Positions 15,955 through 64,000 of a DNA stretch of 64,000 nt are shown here, one piece after another. Every line of letters begins with the position of its first letter. The stretch's first letter is position 1. This DNA comes from Podarcis pityusensis. Taxonomy: Eukaryota. The notes under the pieces were generated by a model that was not told the origin of the DNA, ran no database searches, and saw nothing but the letters and a program-made list of their open reading frames with translations. Location: assembly GCA_964106645.2 (NCBI GenBank), contig OZ067054.1, one strand, 5' to 3'. The position numbers were made by a program, and so were the translations under genes.

Positions 15955-16800
15955 TCACTGAGACCAGAGCTGGCGCCTGCTCAGCTGGGTAAAAAAGCAG
16001 AAGGCAAAATGGAACTGCAGCACATCGCAGATCTTGGACCAAAAGTGACCAGTAAGCCGGCGGAAAGGTGCCCATTGTGCCAGCTCCTGGTCCCACAGCT
16101 TGAGGCTTACAAAGCCCAGGCAAGAGACCAATCCTAGCACCAGGATCCAAGCCGACCGGGCATTACCCAAATGTCTCTGCGCCTTCAGTGCTCTCCAAAC
16201 AATTATAAATATATGTCCACTCAATGCCAGCTCAAAGCCTTGGGGGTGAAGCAATGCCAGAACATAGCTCGTCAGTGAAGCTGCTTCCATGGCCAGGAAA
16301 GTGCCTGGCTGCCACCCGTGCTCCAGAAAGTGACACCAGACAACACCCCAAGCAAAAATTGGCAATGTCAACCACTGATCTAAGACAGCTGCCCAGTGAT
16401 GCTGTGTCCAGAGTCTCACCCATTGTACAGGCCCATATGCAAGCGCCATAAGGGCAAAGACCTCCTGGAGGTAGCATGCCTGACCTCTCTCATCACCTGA
16501 AGGCAGCCAGTGCCAGCCCAGAAAGATGTAGGCCAAGTTGACTAAACAATTGGCAGGCATAGCCAGTACGGGAGGCAATCCTGACACAGTTGGTTCAGCA
16601 TAGTACTCGTACCCAACTTCCGTGTGAACACCGTCAAAGACTCCTGAAGCCACAAGTCCCACACACAGCAGGAGGCCTCCAGACACCAGCAAGAGTGGTT
16701 CTCTGCCTCCTGGTTTCCTCACAGTCCTTTCCAAAGTTCTGGAGGGTTCTTCCTGAATGACGGCCGAACTGCTCCTGCAGCAACTGTTCTGCCGTAACAT
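15955..16800 (-). CDS. TMEM187: Transmembrane protein 187, single coding exon, 281 aa from first in-frame ATG
   Basis: GVFD...VGYEYYAE, YGPVQWVRLWTQ, AVLDQWLTLPIFAW and TGHFWSKICDVLQFHFAF match TMEM187; lies between IRAK1 and HCFC1 as in human; acceptor with pyrimidine tract near 16909-16930. Confidence 0.93.
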   Translation of the reverse strand: MLRQNSCCRSSSAVIQEEPSRTLERTVRKPGGREPLLLVSGGLLLCVGLVASGVFDGVHTEVGYEYYAEPTVSGLPPVLAMPANCLVNLAYIFLGWHWLPSGDERGQACYLQEVFALMALAYGPVQWVRLWTQHHWAAVLDQWLTLPIFAWGVVWCHFLEHGWQPGTFLAMEAASLTSYVLALLHPQGFELALSGHIFIIVWRALKAQRHLGNARSAWILVLGLVSCLGFVSLKLWDQELAQWAPFRRLTGHFWSKICDVLQFHFAFCFFTQLSRRQLWSQ

Positions 16801-18431
16801 GTTGCTTGCTTTGGCAAAAGCCTCCCAAATGCAATTCACAGGTGGTGCGAGGCAGGCTTCCGAGCCTGGTGTTTTCCTATCCCAGTGTGGACTTTGATTC
16901 TCCTTCCCCTACTAACAGCACAAAAAAGGCGGAGTGAATGGGCATTCATGACCAAGAGGGACAGCTGTGCTCTTATCTGGCACGTTTAATGTATTATTGG
17001 CCTTTTCTCTTCTTCACTCCACCCCTCCCCTTTCCCCCCAGAGCAGAGATTGGTGCCTGTGTAGAACTACTTACATGCATAGGCCCTGTCGGTTTCCTTG
17101 GCAGCCGCTCCAGTCACGCTGCTTCCAGTGAATGTGGTTATGAAACAGCTGCAGCGGCAGGATTGGCTGCTGGTGACATCACGGCACAGCGGGGGTGAGG
17201 TTGCTTCCTTCCCAAGGTCTTGTGTTTTGTAACCATGGGGACAGCAGCTGCCAGCCTCTAGGTGGTCCCTTGGGTTAGGCCTGCAAGACATCCTGTAGCT
17301 GGATCTTTACTGCAGAGGCTTTGCTCCCAGTGCCTTTAAAAGAACCTCTACAGGACCCGTGTCAGTTCTTCAAAAATGACATAATACAAAACAACCCACC
17401 ACAGAAGAAGTACCGAGTCTAAATATCATTCAGGAAGTGTTTGGTTATCAAGTTTCTTTGGATATGAGGGCAGTATTAATGAGGAATGTTATTTATTATA
17501 TTTATAGCTTACCTTTCCGCTAAGAAGCTAAAGGCAGTTTGCATTTTATCCTTGCAACAGCCCCATGAAGCAGGTTAGGTACAGGAAGAAGGTGGCTGGC
17601 CTAGAGTCGCCCAGGCAGCTTCAGGGCTGAGAGCAGCAATTTGAACCAGGGCAAGTGGCTCCCTAACATTTTCTCCCCTGGACCTCTGAAAAACTGCTGA
17701 GGGTCTTAATGATTTTTCTGTAGCAACAGTAATGCGCTTTGCTAGATGCTGCATGGTTTTTAATTCTGTTTTCGTTGCTTCTTTTACTTCTTATGTACAG
17801 TGTTCTATTTATTCTATTCCACAGAAGTCAAATTGTAGTGCAATAAAATAAGAAATAAAAGCAATAAAAATGCAATTTAAACTCATTATGAATATTTAAC
17901 ACAATGGATGTGTGGTCTTCCATTTTCAGTCACAAATCTAGACACATGCAGTGGACCACCTGAATGAAGCTTGCGGGTAACAGTTTGGAAACCTCTGAAC
18001 TAGAGTCTTTCTAGCCCCAGTGTGTGACACACTGGCTCTCTTAGTTTAGGACATGTCCCTTTAAATGTGCAGTTTAAAGGGTGCTTTAAATGAGAGAAGG
18101 AATGAATTTTTAAGTCTTTTAAACAAATATATTCATATTTTAATTCATCATTAACAAAAAGGGAAGGGAAAACAAGAAGCATCAGACTCTGGCTGAAATC
18201 CTGTACCCAGTTTCCTGGAAGTAAGCCCTATGCAACTAAATGGGACATAGTTACATCTATAAGATGATGATCTTAAAACTATTATAACATATTCTTCAAC
18301 ATCTGTCATGACTCTTTTAACCGATGAACATGTCCAAAATATCACCAAAATCTGTTTCTCACCAGCCCTAGTTTTAAGATAGCCAGCCTTTCCCCCCATT
18401 AAATCTACATCCCAACCAGCTCTGGAGTATG

Positions 18432-26649: not shown

Positions 26650-52623
<25,974 letters not shown>

Positions 52624-54035: not shown

Positions 54036-54041
54036 ATTAAA
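54036..54041 (+). terminator. HCFC1 polyadenylation signal ATTAAA
   Basis: Variant hexamer followed by a T-run and GT-rich element. Confidence 0.55.
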
Positions 54042-54213
54042 GACCTCTTTTTTTGGAAACCAGGTTCTGTCTGTGAAACTAGATCTTTCCCTCATCCTCT
54101 TCTAGTACTAGGGCGTTTCTGGCTACCTTTTGGGAGAAGAGCCCTCTTACCCTTGTGGGAGGACTGGGACACAAGTGTTTTCACCATTGAAAAGCACAAT
54201 ATTGGCATTCAGC

Positions 54214-54219
54214 TTTATT
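54214..54219 (-). terminator. Rab7-like polyadenylation signal AATAAA (candidate)
   Basis: TTTATT on + strand about 225 nt past the stop. Confidence 0.5.
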
Positions 54220-54443
54220 TCCATGTGCTTGGGAAGAGTAGCCTGGGATATGATCCAGCTCTCCCAAGTGCTAGGCTGTGTCATCCAGAGAACAAAGGTC
54301 TACCTTGGGATCCAGCTCCAGAAGCCTTGCCAAATGTCCTTGGGGCTGTTCTGTGGGGTTGCACTTTCACCCTTCGGGATTGCAGAGCATGAAGAGCCCA
54401 GCCCCTTAGACAGAAGGAATCTTCCCATCTGTATTTGGTCAGA

Positions 54444-54533
54444 TCAGCAGCTACACTTCTCTCTGGCTGCCCCTTCGGGTGGCCTGGTCTCCAGGTGAAC
54501 TGAGTCCAGTTGTGGCTCTTCAGGTACCCTCCG
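54444..54533 (-). CDS. Rab7-like exon 5, [10 protein letters not shown]...REKCSC*
   Basis: CXC geranylgeranylation motif then TGA. Confidence 0.9.
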   Translation of the reverse strand, partial: RRVPEEPQLDSVHLETRPPEGAAREKCSC

Positions 54534-57500
54534 CTGAGGTGAAACAGAAAGAAAAGTGGTGAGGGGGCAAGTGGTTGATGCAGATGGGCAGAGGGCATGA
54601 GGTGCAGGCTGTTGGGAAGGACTTTGTCTTATAAGAAAGTTGAAAGCTGGGAGAGGTGTTTTTGTTTTTAGGGATAAAAGCCATCTCAAAGGTATGTGGT
54701 CTGTCCGGGGCCTTATAAGGGCAGAGCTGAAAATGAGGTTTCTTACATTCTTTAGTACGGCCCGTATGGCCCACTCAAACACCTCCTGCACGTTGGTGGC
54801 TTCCTTGGCGCTGGTTTCAAAGTATTTGGCTTCATGAAGCTTGCTCCACATTTCTGCTTCCTCAGAAGACACCTGGACAAAAACAGGGCTTGGGCATACT
54901 CTGCTCTCTTCCCAATTCCATCTGCAGCTCTTAATCAAAAAGTTTGTCGTCTTTTTAGTGTACATAATGAGACCAAATCTTTAAGATAATATAATTTTTC
55001 CACAGATACCAAATTCTACACCTCTGCTCGACAATTATGCCAAAGTCCTCTGGTGAAGCTGTTCATTAGGATACAATATTCCCTGAACTTTCTGTCCACT
55101 CCCCGTCTCCTTGAGTCGTTGCAAAGAGTTCTTACAGCCCCCTAACAGAACCCCTAAAGAGTTCTGACCCCTAACTACTCCAACCCAATATGTCTGAGAG
55201 CCATGCAGGATGTGGACTTGTGCCCTGCACCTGGCTCCATATGTAGCCCTACCTAGTGGCAGACTTTGGGCTTTAAAATTTCAGCAGTAAACTCTGCAAT
55301 GCCAAACTTTGGGGGGGGGGTGCCTCTCGCCTTTCGCTGTTTGCTATTGTTGCCGGGCCCCCTTAGCTCGGCAGCCAGTGGCACTCCCCTAAATCCACCT
55401 CTGCCCCACCTCACGGTTCTCCAGGTCCATCTTGTTCCCAATGACAGCAGTGGGGAAAGTGGGCTCTTCCTCTGGCTCAATCTGCAACAGGAGCTGCTTG
55501 TGCCACTTATCCAGGGCTTGGAAAGAGCTGACAGATGTGACATCGAAGACGAGAAGGCAGCAGTCTGACCCCCGGTAGAGGGCAGTCCCCAGTGCTTGGA
55601 ACCTTTCTGTACCAGCTGTGTCCCAAATCTAGGTGCAAGAAGGGATAGAAGCTGAGACCTTGATTTCAAGACATCCCTGGGTCCTTGGTGACTTACCTCC
55701 ATTAATCTTGGTTCTCACAAAGTTAGCAAGCATAGGTTTTGTCTGGGGGCATCAGGGGATACCATGCCAAATGATGGTGTGGACTAGAGTCTCCCGTTTC
55801 TTTATTCAATTGATGTTCTGGATTCTTCCACCATGTTTGACCAGGGTTGAGTGGCTGCCACAATTCTGCCAACAGCGAACTAATCTACACATCAGAATGT
55901 ATATAATACCAAATTGCTATAAAGAGATGGAGAGCTGAAGGGGAGCAGCTTTCTTGAACCCCATCTGCCCAGCTACGTTGCTGGGAGTGCAGAAGAATGA
56001 TCCATACTTCTACATTTCAGGTGCCAGCTGTCCATTGTGACTGGCGCCCAGAAAACGAGTGCGGTTATGTACTGTTTTGCCATAAAAGTTGGCAATCTTG
56101 GATTAAACCAGCAGCCAGAAAAAGTACTGAATTAGATGGGGACTGCAGCCCTGTCATGTTGAATGTTGCTTCCTATGATTAGTGGAAACTGACAGTTGTG
56201 CAAAATGAGAAACCACAGGAATATGCTTACCACAAGCTGCTGAATTCAGCTTTGTCACGGAACTTGGGTGTGTGTGGTGCAGTACTGTACACGGACACAA
56301 CCAGTTTGCTATATGGGTTAGAAGCCTTTCCTCAAGCCAAATTGGCTGCTAGCATTGTAAAGGATCTTTGGGGTGGGGTGGGGGCTATCTTGGTACATGC
56401 ACTTTGATCAGGAGTGTTTGCTGTAAAGGTGCCTTTTCTGCCATGCTCTTGATTTTTTTTTTCTTTTGCTTTTTTGAATGGATGGTGTTTAATTTTGCCC
56501 TGTTGGTATGGCACTGGCCATCATTATTGTCTATGAATTGATAAAACTTTGCATGGAACAATTGATAACATGATCCCAAAGAATGATCTGACCACATGTG
56601 GGGTAAATTCTGCTCAGCTTGAGGCTAACCTGGTCTAGCTTTGTAAGTTTTTGCATAGATAGAAGATCACTTTGGAAGCCATATGGTAAGCTCCTTACAG
56701 GAAGGGCCAAGTGTAGGTGCGTTTCGTTGATCTTGCAGCCCAAGGGAGAATTGTGTTAGTTCATGAGAGTTGGGCCATTGCATATTTGGGACTGCAGCAA
56801 TATTGAAATTTCAGTTTTTTAGTTGTGCATATTGCTTCTGTACAAATTGGGGAACAAGAAATGGAAATAAGAATTCAGCATTGTCATTAACATTAATTCT
56901 AGAAGGGAAAGGGTGTTTGCTTTAACTAAGAACCGATTTTTAGCAAATAGCTAGAGTCCACATTGTAATATGCTCGTGGCACCCCACCCGGGGCCTGTCT
57001 CATGGTGATAGGCTTTAGTCCACAAATGCCTGTATCTTATTGACTCTCTTAAGGCTGCCACAATAAAGCTAAAACAAGGCACTTGTAGCAAAACATAGCA
57101 GATTTGGGGTGCTCATATTGAGGGGGCCAGAGGACCCCTTTTCTAGAACATTCTGTTCCATTTTCCTGTATTTTATTTGCCACCACAATTGTCACTGAGC
57201 ACAACCGTCAATTCACTTGCCCATTTTAGATTCTCTTCCTTACACACAAACCTTTAAATATTTTCCTGAAATAGGTGCTTGTACAGAAATTGGATCCCTG
57301 CTACTGCTCCCTCCATCTTGTGCACGAAGGGTGCCATTCTGGCTACATAAGGCACATATAGGATAATTTTAGACCTGGCGTGGGGAACTTGTGGCCTCCA
57401 GGTGGTGTTAAGGCTCCCTCCAGTCTTAGCCAGCATGGCCAATGGCTTAGGGATTATAGGAGCTGGAAATGAAGTATGTTGCTAAAATTGCCCTAGGCTG

Positions 57501-59785
57501 GAGCACAGGGTTTTTTTAATGGGTAACTCTGCTGAGCCTACCTGCACGGTCAGTTTGCGTCCATCAATGTTTACTTCCTTGCTGAGGAAATCTGCTCCAA
57601 TGGTGGCTCTGTAGCGACTGCTGAAGCGGTTGTTAACATACTGGTTCATCAGGGCAGATTTGCCCGCCCTGCGGGGAACGGAGAAGGGTTGACATTTTAA
57701 ATCTGGAGGTCTAGTCAGTAACCTCCCCCCCCACCCCGCCGCCTCATCAACCAGCACAGGGCTGCAGAGGTGGAGCTGGTTCTCTGCTCCTGAACTGCCT
57801 CTTGCACACATGCACGCAGCCTTGTGATAAAGCCTTTTTGGTGGCAGCAGTGGGGAATCCCACGGTAAGATGGCGAAGGCCTTTTGAGCAGCAGTCACTG
57901 GGGCACAGCAGCAGGACGGGAAGGTCTGATGATTTGCTTGTCCCCTTCCGAGGAATATCTAGTTGGCTACTGTAGGAAACGCACTGCGTGAGGCTCAATT
58001 GGCCTTTTGAGTACAAAGGTTTGAAAAAGGCATAAGGAATGCCTGATGCAACTCCAAAGGCAGAATAAGTCATCTTGGTAAAACATGCTTAAAATCAAAC
58101 AATGGCAAAAGCATATCTTGCATCAAAATGCTTTGGCATTGCATGTACAAAGTCTCCAGAAGCCTTTTCTGATGGTGCCCTTTTTTTACTTGGGTCACTT
58201 TTGTACAAAGCTTTGTGTTTGACTGATTTTTGTCTTAATCATTTCAAACAACTGACATGGTTTCAAAATGATATTCAGTGCTTTGCATGCACTGTGTTTG
58301 GCAGCGTTTGAGCCCTACTCTTCTTGTGTGTTTTTCTTCACATTTGGTGGATAAAGGTTAATCCTAACTATTTTACTTTTTGGCATAAAAGGTAAATGAG
58401 AAATCTTAAATCCTCATCGAATTGGACAGTTGTATGCATTCATAATATCTTAAACACATACTAAGGCCCCTTTTGAGTTTAGATACAGATAATGGAAATA
58501 ACCAAATTATTTTACTCAATACATAAAAACTACACTATGTTTAAATAATGGTTATAAAAAGTTGAAGGTGAGTGTTAATTATAATTATACAGTAAGGATT
58601 ATTACTACACTGCCATAAAGCTGTGGTTACTTAATAAATTAGTTGCAACAACAGCTGCTACCAGGCTCTTCAGAGTCAGGTTGATGGGGGAAGGTTAAGC
58701 AAGCACATTTTTCTGAGTATTTTGATGTACATGTGTTTTTGTTAACACTTGTGAAGTTATGCTAATTTTCCAAGCATGCTCGACTAGAGGGGCAGCTGAA
58801 TAAAAATGCAGTAAGTTCTCATGTTCCATTTAGCTCCCCATGACTAGCAAATGCAGACTTGCAGCCTGACCCTGCACCTGTCTACTCAGAGGTAAATCCC
58901 ACTGAGTTCAAGAGGGTTGTATTCCTGCAGTCTAAAGTATGCAACATATTTAAAATGGCAAAATAATGTGAAGAGAACAAATCACAGTTGTGCATAAAAC
59001 ATACAGGCTGCAGGTTTTTCTTTTCTTAAAAAGCACCTTTTTATTGCATCGATGCTCTCTGGGTTCTGGCAATGGTAATACCACTGTGTCCATAGGATAA
59101 TAGTCACTTGACTTGGCCTCTAGTTATTTGGTGTTGCCTCTTCCATCTGCTTTAATTCTGGGAACAAACAGCTGGTCTAATTCAGCTGCACCCCACAAAA
59201 CTGTCCTGTTATCAGCTGCCTGTGGTATACACACGGAGCCCGGGCAGCTGCAACGTGGTCCCACTTGTTGCAGGTACTTTCAAGGACTTTGAAGGAGGTG
59301 GGACAGGAGAGCAGCGTGGAGCGCACCGGGATCTCGCTGCCCGTGTGAAGCAAAGACTAAGGCGCTCGCGGAGCGAATCAAGACGACTTCTTCAAGCGGG
59401 CGCCTCGCCCCAGGCCGCGGGGGCCGAACGCTTCCCAGCCTGGGCTGCAGAGAATACCGGGCGGGTGGTTGTGGAGGCAGCAGAGCCTCGCGGAAGTTTC
59501 TCCCTGCGCGCGTTTACCGGGCTGCCCCGGACGGGCTGCCCCTGCCCCTGCGCGGCGCCGCCCCTTCCACCTGCCGCCTTAACCCCTTGGCTGCCGAACG
59601 GGGACAGGATCCCGGGAAGCCTTCCTCTTCCCGCCAGCCTGGAGCCCCGACACCCGCTTAGCCGTCGGAGCCCGGCCGGGGGGCCAGGAGGGGCCAGCTC
59701 TCCCGGCGCCTTCCCGATCCAGGCGCCCCTTTGCTTACCCGGAATTGCCGATCAGCAGGATCTTGAGGTGGGAACGTCTGAACAT
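54444..59785 (-). CDS. Ras-related protein Rab7-like paralog, 202 aa; coding exons 59739-59785, 57542-57668, 55410-55628, 54747-54872, 54444-54533
   Basis: G1 GNSGAGKS, G2 [10 protein letters not shown]3 WDTAGTE, G4 GNKMD, G5 ETSAK and C-terminal CSC; canonical splice sites; 609 nt in one frame. Confidence 0.92.
54747..54872 (-). CDS. Rab7-like exon 4, VSSEEAEMW...[12 protein letters not shown]...LKN
   Basis: G5 motif; AG/GT ends. Confidence 0.92.
55410..55628 (-). CDS. Rab7-like exon 3, [14 protein letters not shown]...[10 protein letters not shown]
   Basis: Switch II, YRGSDCC and G4; 219 nt; absent from the ORF track, translated by hand. Confidence 0.92.
57542..57668 (-). CDS. Rab7-like exon 2, [11 protein letters not shown]...KLTVQ
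   Basis: P-loop and switch I; AG/GT ends; 127 nt. Confidence 0.92.
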
Positions 59786-60220
59786 GGGGCGTCTGCGCCA
59801 GAACCTGCGGAGAGACGGGCGGGTGAGGGCGGCGGCGGCGGCGGCGGCGGAGCAGCCCTACGGGCAGTCGGGTCAGCTCGGGACCCCCCCGCGGCCAGGC
59901 GTGGATTCCCGCGACCTTTGTGGGGTCCCCTGCTCAGTCCGCGGGGCGGGCGCCCGGACCTCGGCCCCCAAGCCCCTCCCCGGCCGTGCGCCCCCCCGAG
60001 CCACCTCGGCGCGGCACAGCCTCCCGCAAACTCCCTCCGGAGAAGGGAGGGCGCTGCTTGGAGCTCCGGGCAGCTGCTCGCTCTCGCCTTCCTGCCGGGC
60101 TGCTCGGCGCCAGGGAGGAGGAAGGGCGAGGGGCTGCGCCTTCCGGACACGCTTTCAGGCGAGGCCGGTGGGATCCGGCTTGTGCCAAGGCGAAGCAAGG
60201 ATCGCGATGGAGAATCTCAT
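59300..60220 (-). promoter_or_regulatory. CpG island over promoter, exon 1 and intron 1 of the Rab7-like gene
   Basis: Very high GC/CpG, GC boxes, short (GGC)n run at about 59828-59850. Confidence 0.8.
59739..59785 (-). CDS. Rab7-like exon 1, [16 protein letters not shown]
   Basis: ATG in CpG island; GG|GTAAGC donor. Confidence 0.88.
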
Positions 60221-63179: not shown

Positions 63180-64000
63180 CAATTGTTAAAAGACACGCCC
63201 CCCAGCTGTGAAACGCGGCTCTGAAGTAAGTAGGAGAGAGCAGGGGGTCCCTCCCCGCCTCCCCCAGATTGGCAGCAAGATTATTCGGATGCCTTGGCAC
63301 CTTGCTATGGTATATATTTGAAACGAACCATGTGGTCCTAGAGGGAAAGCACACGCACCGCCATCTCTCTCTCCAGAGTTCACCTGGGACGGGGGCGGCA
63401 GCTGCTGGCTTTTTGCTGCCAAGGGGGATTCCTCCCCTGACGTACGAGCGGGGCATCCCACTAGCGGTGACATCACGCAGCCGCGTTTGGGGTCGTCCCT
63501 GCTCCCAGTCGCCCCTAGGCCCTTCCGCTCAGCAGTCCCTCAGGACCAGCGGGGAGCCACCCGAGTTAGGAAGGCTGACTGGGGGCGTTTAAATGCTTTG
63601 TGCCTTTTGTTGCCCTTTTGTCGTCACGATCACTGTTCTGGGATTCCTGCTGCCGATCTCTGGGCCGGATCACGGCAGTTGTAGGGTTAACAAATGGAAA
63701 CAGAGGAAAAGGAACAAATCAGGGTCTTCGCCCCCCCACGTGGGGGAAAGGGTGGGGCTAGTGTCAGGTGACTTGGGGAAATCATATGACCAGCAGTTCC
63801 CTACTTCTGTAAATTTTTAAGTTTTGGGGGGTGGGCGTTGTACGTGGTTTTATGCTAGTTTCCCGCGGAGAGCGGCAGCGCGTTTCGGGACTCTCCCCTC
63901 CCCTCTCGGGGTCGGATCCTGGGACGGGCTGACTCTGCTGATCCAGGAGCACCTTCGCGCCCCTACAGGGATCGCCGCTGGAGAAAGCAGCGAGGATGGA
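63180..64000 (+). promoter_or_regulatory. CpG-rich promoter / 5' end of the next gene (RENBP expected by synteny); candidate ATG at 63996
   Basis: CpG enrichment, E-boxes at 63737 and 63763, possible acceptor at 63968, AGGATGG Kozak at the window edge. Confidence 0.45.

What the first reader, a model, noticed from the sequence alone, without database searches (positions are those of the whole stretch)
54444..59785. Intact third Rab7 paralog beside HCFC1, a candidate ohnolog lost in mammals
Seen: a five-exon, 202-aa Rab with all G-boxes, a CSC prenylation tail, clean splice sites and its own CpG island. The coding exons are 47/127/219/126/90 nt. Known (from memory): RAB7A has the same intron positions and a CSC end. 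RAB7B has WDTGGQE and a different tail, and RAB9 coding regions are intronless. Human HCFC1 is followed by RENBP with no Rab in between. Inference: retained introns exclude a retrocopy. Xq28 belongs to the paralogon that includes 3q21 (RAB7A) and 1q32 (RAB7B), so this may be an ancient whole-genome-duplication copy kept in reptiles and essentially uncharacterised.
Basis: partly seen in the sequence, partly recalled or inferred. Interest (0 to 1): 0.85.

Follow-up and report, generated by a model that had tools for sequence, protein, structure and literature searches.

The report
Lizard Rab7c gene beside HCFC1
This is a real, expressed and conserved gene for a third Rab7-type membrane-traffic switch ("Rab7c", named in 2009 and already auto-annotated), found from sharks to lizards and monotremes but not in other mammals or birds, and notable because its catalytic glutamine is always a threonine and nobody has studied its function.

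Summary
On the minus strand, 54444-59785, lies a five-exon gene (47/127/219/126/90 nt, all GT-AG) for a 202-aa Rab ending in CSC, behind a CpG island. All four introns are spliced out in transcript contigs from four studies. dN/dS among lizards is about 0.1.

The gene is not new. It equals the RefSeq "Rab-7a-like" protein of Podarcis lilfordi. It belongs to the "Rab7c" clade named in 2009 from zebrafish and Xenopus, which was then assumed lost in amniotes.

In my tree the clade has 100/100 support and follows the species tree: sharks, ray-finned fishes, amphibians, then monotremes plus squamates. It lies tail-to-tail with HCFC1 in lizards, platypus, frog, bichir, gar and grouper. Its intron positions match those of rab7a.

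- Monotremes keep the gene, so the loss is in therians, not all mammals.
- No turtle, crocodilian or bird ortholog was found.
- The G3 box reads DTAGTE, not DTAGQE, in all 35 clade members.

A 1R/2R origin is plausible but unresolved. The likely mechanism (inferred) is a prenylated endolysosomal Rab with very slow intrinsic GTP hydrolysis that depends on GAPs.

The parts
59739..59785 (-). Coding exon 1 (47 nt): start codon, strand beta-1 and the first half of the P-loop, including the His at the Rab7 position-8 equivalent
   Evidence: ATG, GT donor, upstream in-frame stop. Joint 57667/8 to 59738/9 in four runs.
57542..57668 (-). Coding exon 2 (127 nt, phase 2): rest of the P-loop (GKS), helix alpha-1 and switch I (YRATIGADF)
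   Evidence: best solved match Rab7a, 51 bits. Joints on both sides.
55410..55628 (-). Coding exon 3 (219 nt): G3 box DTAGTE, switch II, the CC pair and G4 NKMD
   Evidence: (Rab7a 96 bits, Ypt7 81, Rab9 75). Joints.
54747..54872 (-). Coding exon 4 (126 nt): G5 box (ETSAK) and helix alpha-5
   Evidence: Joints.
54444..54533 (-). Coding exon 5 (87 nt plus stop): hypervariable tail and the CSC prenylation motif
   Evidence: Joint 54533 to 54747 in three runs.
54214..54443 (-). Likely 3' UTR, down to an AATAAA signal (read on the minus strand) at 54214-54219. It lies next to, or overlaps, the 3' end of HCFC1.
   Evidence: signal position. Contigs run on past 54300. The exact transcript end is not mapped.
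59250..60200 (.). CpG-island promoter region, including a (GGC)7 run at 59828-59848
   Evidence: GC 0.71, CpG o/e 0.83; repeat.
54873..54929 (-). Optional 57-nt 5' extension of exon 4 (upstream acceptor), which gives the 19-aa insertion of P. lilfordi RefSeq isoform X1
   Evidence: (P0163 sequence) compared. Not seen in the contigs.
59038..59335 (-). Minor alternative first exon inside intron 1. Its product would lack strand beta-1 and the start of the P-loop.
   Evidence: Joint 57667 to 59036 in run X2 only, at depth about 10 against 67-111 for the main form.. The boundary is uncertain by 1-3 nt.
34705..35175 (+). An exon of the neighbouring gene HCFC1 (Kelch_HCF). HCFC1 runs on the + strand from about 28.5 kb to about 54.06 kb, tail-to-tail with the Rab gene.
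   Evidence: PF13854, 117 bits, cut-off 113. (its 3' exons match the convergent flank in Pogona, platypus, gar and grouper).
15958..16839 (-). TMEM187, the other neighbour of HCFC1, which fixes the region as the counterpart of human Xq28
   Evidence: PF15100, 345 bits.

Best explanation
This is the lizard ortholog of Rab7c, an old jawed-vertebrate paralog of Rab7a. It is a functional, transcribed gene lying tail-to-tail with HCFC1. In Pogona and platypus its 5' neighbour is RENBP, head-to-head. Shown here: it arose by DNA-level duplication of a Rab7 gene, has existed since before sharks and bony vertebrates split, has been inherited vertically in that position, and is under strong purifying selection. 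Inferred: the protein is doubly geranylgeranylated at its CXC tail and works as a membrane-bound switch in the endolysosomal system, like Rab7a. Its catalytic Gln (Rab7a Q67) is Thr in every member, the same G3 motif as Rap GTPases. It therefore probably has very low intrinsic GTPase activity, stays GTP-bound longer, and is switched off only by a GAP that supplies the catalytic residue in trans. TBC RabGAPs bring their own Gln finger. Changes at L8H, K38R and F77L and in the tail suggest an effector and regulation set that only partly overlaps Rab7a's. My odds: identity and functionality about 0.9; slow, GAP-dependent switch about 0.5; 1R/2R origin about 0.6.
For: Gene model and splicing. Identity: the model matches P. 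lilfordi 'Rab-7a-like isoform X1' at all 202 residues (91.4% over 221 columns because of that isoform's 19-aa insertion) and is 96% identical to Zootoca. Clade: 35 sequences are monophyletic at 100/100, the internal topology follows the species tree, and the window is sister to Zootoca. Link to the published Rab7c: X. tropicalis NP_989167.1 is in the same 90% cluster as the X. laevis clade member P0267, and the diagnostic His at position 8 is present. Synteny with HCFC1: window, Xenopus (36), grouper (38), bichir with TMEM187, an IRAK1-like and an MBD gene (39), platypus and Pogona with RENBP (41, 42), HCFC1 identity of the flanks (54). Same introns as rab7a. Constraint: dN/dS 0.085-0.12 for unsaturated squamate pairs. 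G3 motif: WDTAGTE in 35/35 clade members and WDTAGQE in 20/20 Rab7a, invertebrate and plant Rab7. Other diagnostic sites. Fold: small-GTPase topology with Rab7a as the best structural match. Literature: Rap has Thr instead of Gln61, and RapGAP supplies the catalytic residue (PMC2265111). TBC GAPs supply the Gln finger in trans, and Rab1 Q70 mutants remain substrates of a TBC-like GAP (PMC3674391).
Against: No biochemical or localisation data exist for any Rab7c, so the mechanism is inference from sequence. RAB7B and RAB9 sequences could not be obtained by reference and are absent from the tree. The relationship of Rab7c to vertebrate Rab7a and invertebrate Rab7 is weakly resolved (66/70), and the long stem (0.52) invites long-branch artefacts. 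The runs used for splicing are only guessed to be RNA, though spliced joints and the exon-to-intron depth contrast argue for it. Two shark predictions end CGCR and CACS instead of CXC. Squamates in the window's group have Ala where Rab7a has the regulatory Ser72, so regulation may differ even within the clade.
Confidence: 0.85

Rival explanations
1. It is a recent, squamate-specific duplicate of RAB7A.
For: Automatic names such as 'Rab-7a-like'. Best solved-structure matches are Rab7a.
Against: It is only 49% identical to canonical Rab7a. It groups at 100/100 with shark, fish, amphibian and monotreme genes that share the HCFC1 position.
Confidence: 0.01
2. It is simply the ortholog of mammalian RAB7B or of RAB9.
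For: UniRef labels many clade members 'Rab-7b'. Exon 4 alone scores slightly better against Rab9A than Rab7a (30 against 22 bits).
Against: X. tropicalis has a separate Rab7b (NP_001096381.1) besides Rab7c (NP_989167.1). The 2009 paper gives Rab7b an Asp and Rab7c a His at position 8, and the window has His. Exons 2 and 3 score far higher against Rab7a than Rab9. RAB7B and RAB9 were not placed in my tree.
Confidence: 0.03
3. It is a real and conserved protein but works as a pseudo-GTPase. It would bind nucleotide as a permanently 'on' adaptor or decoy, for example by titrating Rab7 effectors or regulators, with no GAP-driven cycle.
For: The catalytic Gln is replaced in all 35 members. The protein evolves several-fold faster than Rab7a (branch lengths; identities).
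Against: The P-loop, Mg-binding Ser/Thr, G4 and G5 are all intact and invariant, as expected for a nucleotide-dependent switch. TBC GAPs do not need the Rab's own Gln (PMC3674391). Rap, with the same motif, cycles normally (PMC2265111).
Confidence: 0.15
4. The duplication that made Rab7c is not a 1R/2R whole-genome event. It would be an older or an independent small-scale duplication that happened to land beside HCFC1.
For: The base of the tree is unresolved: the Rab7a, Rab7c and invertebrate polytomy, and only 66/70 for Rab7c plus vertebrate Rab7a. No cyclostome Rab7c was seen; the one hagfish hit is Rab7a-type.
Against: No invertebrate sequence carries the clade's motif. Intron positions are shared with rab7a. 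The locus lies in the Xq28-type block, whose PNCK, PLXNA3, L1CAM and ATP2B3 genes are published 1R/2R quartet members (PMC8851675). The 2009 paper reached the same WGD suggestion.
Confidence: 0.3

Closest known systems
Rab7c clade of Mackiewicz & Wyroba 2009 (Danio NP_001013496.1, X. tropicalis NP_989167.1)
   Same: Same clade: the X. tropicalis protein clusters with a member of my 100/100 clade. It shares the His at Rab7 position 8, the fast evolution, the conserved local synteny and the suggested 1R/2R origin.
   Different: The paper knew only two species and assumed loss in amniotes. Here the gene is intact and constrained in squamates and present in monotremes, sharks, rays, gar, paddlefish, bichir, salamanders and caecilians. 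The paper's main text does not mention the Gln-to-Thr change in G3 or name HCFC1.
Rab7a (RAB7A), the canonical late-endosome/lysosome Rab
   Same: It is the best sequence and structure match (about 49-53% identity). It shares all four intron positions and phases, the CXC tail, the switch I core, the CC pair in beta-3 and the overall fold.
   Different: Rab7a has the catalytic Gln67 and is almost invariant across animals (86-87% between frog and sea star or hagfish). Rab7c has Thr there, plus I13L, T22S, K32R, K38R and F77L, a His at position 8 and a different tail. It also evolves much faster.
Rab7b (RAB7B)
   Same: Another divergent vertebrate Rab7 paralog.
   Different: It is a separate gene in Xenopus. 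The 2009 paper gives it Asp at position 8, where the window has His. It could not be put in my tree.
Rap1/Rap2 GTPases (G3 motif DTAGTE)
   Same: Identical G3 motif, with Thr in place of the catalytic Gln. This is the precedent for a small GTPase that relies wholly on its GAP for hydrolysis.
   Different: Rap belongs to the Ras family, not the Rab family, and its GAPs (Asn thumb) are unrelated to TBC RabGAPs. This is an analogy of mechanism, not membership.

Membership tests
Rab / small GTPase superfamily | G1-G5 nucleotide-binding boxes | tested here: met
   G1 GNSGAGKS, G2 Thr38, G3 DTAGTE (variant), G4 NKMD and G5 SAK. Pfam Ras on exons 2-4.
Rab / small GTPase superfamily | C-terminal double-cysteine prenylation motif | tested here: met
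   Ends in CSC. A CXC tail in 33 of 35 clade members.
Rab / small GTPase superfamily | Small-GTPase alpha/beta fold | tested here: met
   Model of the Pogona ortholog (90% identical): six strands and five helices, mean pLDDT 67. The top Foldseek hits are all Rab7a, then Rab9.
Rab / small GTPase superfamily | Catalytic Gln in G3 (DTAGQE) | tested here: not met
   Thr at this position in the window and in all 35 clade members. This does not exclude membership, since some accepted small GTPases lack the Gln, but it changes the expected enzymology.
Rab7 subfamily | Closest similarity to Rab7/Ypt7 rather than to other Rabs | tested here: met
   Exon 3: Rab7a 96 bits, Ypt7 81, Rab9 75, other Rabs 51 or less. 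Exon 2: 51 against 37 or less. Exon 4 is the weak exception.
Rab7 subfamily | Gene structure shared with rab7a | tested here: met
   Medaka rab7a has exons of 53/127/219/129/96 nt, with introns at the same alignment columns and phases.
Rab7 subfamily | Monophyly with Rab7a to the exclusion of Rab9 and Rab7b | not tested
   No Rab9 or Rab7b sequence could be obtained by reference, so the tree holds only Rab7a-type, Rab7c and invertebrate/plant Rab7.
Rab7c clade (2009) | Groups with the X. tropicalis and Danio Rab7c proteins | tested here: met
   NP_989167.1 is P0349, in the 90% cluster of P0267. P0267 lies inside the 100/100 clade with the window. The Danio protein itself was not retrieved, but cypriniform members are in the clade.
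Rab7c clade (2009) | His at Rab7 position 8 | tested here: met
   Paper statement. The window begins MFRRSHLK. His is invariant in amniote members, though some salamanders and sharks differ.
Rab7c clade (2009) | Conserved local synteny among members | tested here: met
   Convergent HCFC1 in the window, Pogona, Varanus, platypus, Xenopus, bichir, gar and grouper.
RAB7B | Asp at position 8, and one and the same gene as Rab7b in species that have it | tested here: not met
The window has His. Xenopus has separate Rab7b and Rab7c accessions.
   Similarity favours Rab7a and the gene has four coding introns. The intronless state of RAB9 was not checked here.
1R/2R ohnolog of RAB7A | Present across jawed vertebrates and absent outside vertebrates | tested here: met
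   Sharks and rays through monotremes. No invertebrate hit carries the clade motif. Cyclostomes are unresolved.
1R/2R ohnolog of RAB7A | Sister to vertebrate Rab7a in a rooted tree | tested here: inconclusive
   The best tree has Rab7c plus vertebrate Rab7a together, but at only 66/70.
1R/2R ohnolog of RAB7A | Paralogs lie in sister regions of one paralogon | tested here: inconclusive
   The window and the bichir locus are Xq28-type (TMEM187, HCFC1, IRAK1-like, MBD gene). Xq28 genes PNCK, PLXNA3 and L1CAM are published quartet members. The positions of RAB7A and RAB7B come from memory only. The kinase next to the gar and bichir gene could not be identified.

The most novel reading that the evidence does not exclude
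Rab7c is a 1R/2R ohnolog of RAB7A and RAB7B that has kept a Rap-like Thr in place of the catalytic Gln since before sharks and bony vertebrates split. That would make it a naturally slow-hydrolysing, strictly GAP-dependent (or near GTP-locked) endolysosomal Rab with its own effector set. It was then lost independently on the therian and the turtle-crocodile-bird stems. If so, 'complete' Rab7 knock-outs in zebrafish and frog are not complete.
Probability: 0.35. Interest if true: 0.6.

Novelty: new member of a known kind. Interest (0 to 1): 0.4.

Why it matters
Rab7 is a central regulator of late endosomes, lysosomes and autophagy, and its vertebrate gene family is usually described as RAB7A plus RAB7B. 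This finding matters in four ways:

- **Family size.** A third, widely conserved member exists in most jawed-vertebrate lineages, including amniotes. The only paper on it had assumed amniotes lost it.
- **Natural experiment.** Its catalytic residue is naturally replaced, which offers a test of how far a Rab cycle can rely on the GAP alone.
- **Model organisms.** A zebrafish study that removed 'all three rab7 genes' did not include it (10.1101/2023.03.09.531857), so residual Rab7-like activity may affect how such knock-outs are read.
- **Gene loss.** The pattern of loss (therians, and apparently turtles, crocodilians and birds) is a neat case of differential paralog loss at a fixed, easily recognised locus between RENBP and HCFC1.

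None of this changes basic understanding, and the gene is already in the databases under generic names.

Tried and rejected
- **Earlier notes.** The search of earlier findings by place and by words returned nothing for this genome.
- **Exon-level searches.** Exon 3 alone against the 50%-identity representative library gave mostly fragments and mis-spliced predictions. These were useful only as seeds.
- **RAB7B and RAB9.** I could not obtain these sequences by reference, because each search lists only the best 120-150 hits and those were filled by Rab7c and Rab7a. They are missing from the tree, and the case against RAB7B or RAB9 orthology rests on the 2009 paper's accessions, diagnostic residues and per-exon scores.
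- **Look-ups with no record.** Echidna isoform X2 and the Hemicordylus protein were 'not on record' for contig look-up. The catshark locus had no DNA and no neighbours listed.
- **Kinase neighbour.** I tried to show that the 344-aa kinase beside the gar and bichir gene is a CaMK1-family (PNCK-like) gene by Pfam scans of 20 minus-strand ORFs in the gar flank. There were no hits, so its identity is untested.
- **RENBP.** I looked for it in the window beyond the CpG island. Only a short conserved piece at 63714-63800 matched the Pogona intergenic region, so RENBP probably starts at or beyond the window's end.
- **ESM Atlas.** The look-up gave only generic Rab clusters.
- **Literature.** Searches for the paralogon by cytoband terms found little, and Klöpper et al. 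2012 does not discuss this paralog.
- **Saturation.** dN/dS for distant pairs is saturated (dS above 1.5 or undefined) and was not used.
- **Rejected readings.** Retrocopy (four introns shared with rab7a), pseudogene (open frame, splicing, dN/dS about 0.1) and recent duplicate (tree).

Full report
**How the spliced model was handled.** The model has no stored reference. All database searches therefore used single exons by window reference, or stored ids of orthologs found that way. The joined 202-aa protein and its CDS were never sent to a search tool. They were assembled only inside local scripts from window.fa, for comparison with sequences already fetched, for the tree and for dN/dS.

**1. 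The observation.**
- The gene is on the minus strand. Anchored on splice signals, the coding exons are 59739-59785, 57542-57668, 55410-55628, 54747-54872 and 54444-54533. Every intron is GT..AG and the acceptors follow pyrimidine-rich tracts. The CDS is 609 nt for 202 aa ending in KCSC, and an in-frame stop lies 21 codons upstream of the ATG.
- Exons 2, 3 and 4 each match Pfam Ras.
- The promoter region 59250-60200 has GC 0.71 and CpG o/e 0.83, against about 0.22 in the introns.

**2. Expression.** Sixteen runs guessed to be RNA hold 13-24% of the 5.6-kb stretch, and the best eight (0.20-0.24) match the size of a spliced mRNA. Contigs of four runs from four studies and two closely related organisms were laid on the gene.
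- All four runs show joints at 54869/72 to 55407/10, 55628 to 57542 and 57667/8 to 59738/9.
- Three runs show the joint 54533 to 54747.
- Exon depth is 100-320 in the two deepest runs (X2, X9), against about 0-16 in most intron bins.
- The runs are contigs and their RNA status is a guess. However, a form with all four introns removed is what a transcript looks like.
- Run X2 also shows a minor alternative first exon inside intron 1 (about 59038-59335), which would remove strand beta-1 and the start of the P-loop.

**3. What it is.**
- *Per-exon similarity.* Exon 3 scores 96 bits against Rab7a, 81 against Ypt7 and 75 against Rab9A. Exon 2 scores 51 against 37. Only the short exon 4 slightly prefers Rab9A.
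- *Seeds.* Exon 3 against 1.84 billion cluster representatives found cobra fragments at 92% identity, plus frog, teleost and platypus proteins at 64-68%, all with DTAGTERF.
- *Profile searches.* Profiles seeded with these found full-length relatives in many squamates, frogs, salamanders, caecilians, bichir, sturgeon and paddlefish, gar, many teleosts, sharks and rays, echidna and platypus. Their names are generic: 'Rab-7a-like', 'rab7', or UniRef's misleading 'Rab-7b'.
- *Species.* The window protein matches P. lilfordi 'Rab-7a-like isoform X1' at all 202 residues, apart from a 19-aa insertion in that isoform. The insertion comes from an upstream acceptor of exon 4. The protein is 96% identical to Zootoca, 80-90% to other squamates, 57-63% to amphibians and about 51-54% to teleosts. 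The window is therefore from a lacertid lizard, and the gene is already a RefSeq prediction.

**4. [quoted passage not shown]
- They knew it only from Danio (NP_001013496.1) and X. tropicalis (NP_989167.1).
- They reported shared local synteny and a His at Rab7 position 8.
- They assumed it was lost in amniotes and suggested a link to 1R/2R.
- NP_989167.1 lies in the same 90% cluster as the X. laevis protein P0267, which sits inside my clade. The window protein has the His (MFRRSHLK). So the window gene is a Rab7c.
- The same paper lists a separate X. tropicalis Rab7b (NP_001096381.1), so Rab7c is not the RAB7B ortholog.

**5. Phylogeny.** The tree is IQ-TREE, LG+C20 PMSF, 55 rows and 207 columns.
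- The 35 candidate Rab7c sequences form one clade at 100/100 on a long stem (0.52).
- Inside it the order is sharks and rays, then ray-finned fishes (bichir, paddlefish, gar, teleosts), then amphibians (not resolved as one group), then monotremes plus squamates. This broadly follows the species tree.
- The window is sister to Zootoca (100/98).
- Vertebrate Rab7a forms its own group (93/79).
- The base is poorly resolved. The best tree joins Rab7c to vertebrate Rab7a, but at only 66/70.
- RAB7B and RAB9 could not be included.
- Rab7c evolves much faster than Rab7a. Shark and lizard Rab7c are 56% identical, whereas hagfish and frog Rab7a are 87% identical.

**6. Synteny.**
- In the window the order is TMEM187 (15958-16839, minus, 345 bits), HCFC1 (plus strand; Kelch_HCF at 34705-35175, 117 bits), then the Rab (minus strand). 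This is the human Xq28 arrangement with the Rab added.
- The Rab is convergent with a Kelch_HCF gene in X. laevis, where a LEM-domain gene lies upstream, and in grouper.
- In bichir, a TMEM187 gene, a Death+kinase gene (IRAK1-like) and an MBD gene (MECP2-like) follow HCFC1.
- In platypus and Pogona the gene lies between a GlcNAc 2-epimerase gene (RENBP, head-to-head) and a protein of 2,236-2,363 aa.
- The window's HCFC1 3' exons match those convergent flanks in Pogona, platypus, gar and grouper at 84-98% identity for the best-conserved exons.
- This fixed position across bony vertebrates, together with the tree, establishes orthology.

**7. Gene structure and selection.**
- The x/127/219/126/y exon pattern holds in seven other species.
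- Medaka rab7a has 53/127/219/129/96 nt, with introns at the same columns and phases. The paralogs therefore arose by DNA-level duplication, not retroposition.
- dN/dS for unsaturated squamate pairs is 0.085-0.12, with dS 0.58-1.25.

**8. Distribution.** With tetrapod and amniote-only profiles, every hit above the canonical Rab7a level came from squamates, monotremes, amphibians, ray-finned fishes or cartilaginous fishes.
- No turtle, crocodilian, bird, tuatara, marsupial or placental protein appeared.
- This is absence from predicted proteomes, not proof of gene loss.
- It suggests at least two losses in amniotes.

**9. Mechanism.** *Shown:*
- WDTAGTE occurs in 35/35 Rab7c sequences and WDTAGQE in 20/20 Rab7a, invertebrate and plant Rab7 sequences.
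- Other sites that separate the groups at 90% or more are I13L, T22S, K32R, K38R and F77L.
- The P-loop, G4, G5, the CC pair and the CXC tail are conserved.
- The fold model is a standard small GTPase, and its nearest solved relatives are Rab7a complexes.

*Inferred:*
- Prenylation at CXC and membrane attachment.
- An endolysosomal role, by homology with Rab7a.
- Very low intrinsic GTP hydrolysis, because the catalytic Gln is missing. Rap GTPases carry the same Thr and depend on RapGAP for catalysis (PMC2265111).
- Inactivation should still be possible, because TBC RabGAPs insert their own Gln finger, and Rab1 Q70 mutants remain substrates of a TBC-like GAP (PMC3674391).
- The changes at position 8, in switch II (F77L) and in the tail suggest a partly different effector set.

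The main text of the 2009 paper has no mention of glutamine, Q67 or hydrolysis. A search for the motif found only Rap papers. As far as this library shows, the G3 substitution in Rab7c is unremarked.

**10. Origin.** *For a 1R/2R origin:*
- The gene is found across jawed vertebrates.
- No invertebrate member was seen.
- Introns are shared with rab7a.
- The topology is weakly favourable (66/70).
- The locus lies in an Xq28-type block whose PNCK, PLXNA3, L1CAM and ATP2B3 relatives are published 1R/2R quartets (PMC8851675).

*Open points:*
- The human positions of RAB7A and RAB7B are from memory.
- The kinase beside the gar and bichir gene could not be identified.
- Cyclostomes are unresolved.

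I put the ohnolog reading at about 0.6.

**11. Verdict.** This is a real, ordinary-looking but functionally unstudied gene. It is the squamate member of the known Rab7c clade and is already predicted by RefSeq. What this analysis adds:
- its presence and constraint in amniotes (squamates and monotremes);
- the fixed position between RENBP and HCFC1;
- the invariant Gln-to-Thr change;
- the fact that a zebrafish study of 'all three rab7 genes' left it out (10.1101/2023.03.09.531857).

Novelty: new member of a known kind. Interest: moderate.

Noticed in passing
window 15958-16839 (-): An intact single-exon TMEM187 gene (Pfam PF15100, 345 bits). Together with HCFC1, it shows that the window is the counterpart of human Xq28.
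   Followed up: partly
window about 54040-54440: HCFC1 (+) and the Rab gene (-) end within a few hundred bases of each other. One contig of run X1 runs from the Rab's last exon more than 1 kb further into the HCFC1 3' region, so the two 3' UTRs may overlap as convergent transcripts.
   Followed up: no
window 59038-59335 (-): A minor alternative first exon inside intron 1, joined to exon 2 in one run only. Its product would lack strand beta-1 and the start of the P-loop, so it is probably non-functional or regulatory.
   Followed up: partly
window 54873-54929 (-): An upstream acceptor of exon 4 explains the 19-aa insertion in P. lilfordi RefSeq isoform X1. The insertion would sit just after the NKxD box, and it was not seen in the four runs examined.
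   Followed up: partly
window 59828-59848: A (GGC)7 triplet repeat lies just upstream of the start codon, within the CpG island. It reads (GCC)7 on the gene's strand.
   Followed up: no
window 58877-58911 and 57413-57445: Short stretches in introns 1 and 2 where many unrelated contigs begin or end and depth spikes. These are most likely fragments of an interspersed repeat that is transcribed elsewhere in the genome.
   Followed up: no
window 63714-63800: A short piece is conserved with the Pogona RENBP-Rab intergenic region (63-72% at the peptide level, in several frames). It may be a shared regulatory element or the RENBP 5' end. RENBP itself seems to lie beyond the window.
   Followed up: partly
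P0298 (Mustelus), P0308 (Scyliorhinus): Two shark Rab7c predictions end in CGCR and CACS instead of CXC. This may be a mis-predicted last exon or a different prenylation signal.
   Followed up: no
L005 10501-10675 (platypus); P0337, P0279: The 217-aa monotreme isoforms carry a 16-aa insertion in the middle of the P-loop, from a longer exon 2 (175 instead of 127 nt). Echidna isoform X3 (201 aa) has the canonical form. Which isoform is actually made is unknown.
   Followed up: partly
L009 (medaka rab7a locus): Medaka rab7a lies beside an ARPC4 gene. From memory, human ARPC4 sits next to CAMK1 on 3p25, the paralog of Xq28 PNCK. This would fit a paralogous-region relationship with the Rab7c locus, but it was not tested.
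   Followed up: no
database names: UniRef propagates the name 'Ras-related protein Rab-7b' to most Rab7c-clade proteins, and NCBI calls them 'Rab-7a', 'Rab-7a-like' or 'rab7'. These names hide a distinct paralog.
   Followed up: partly
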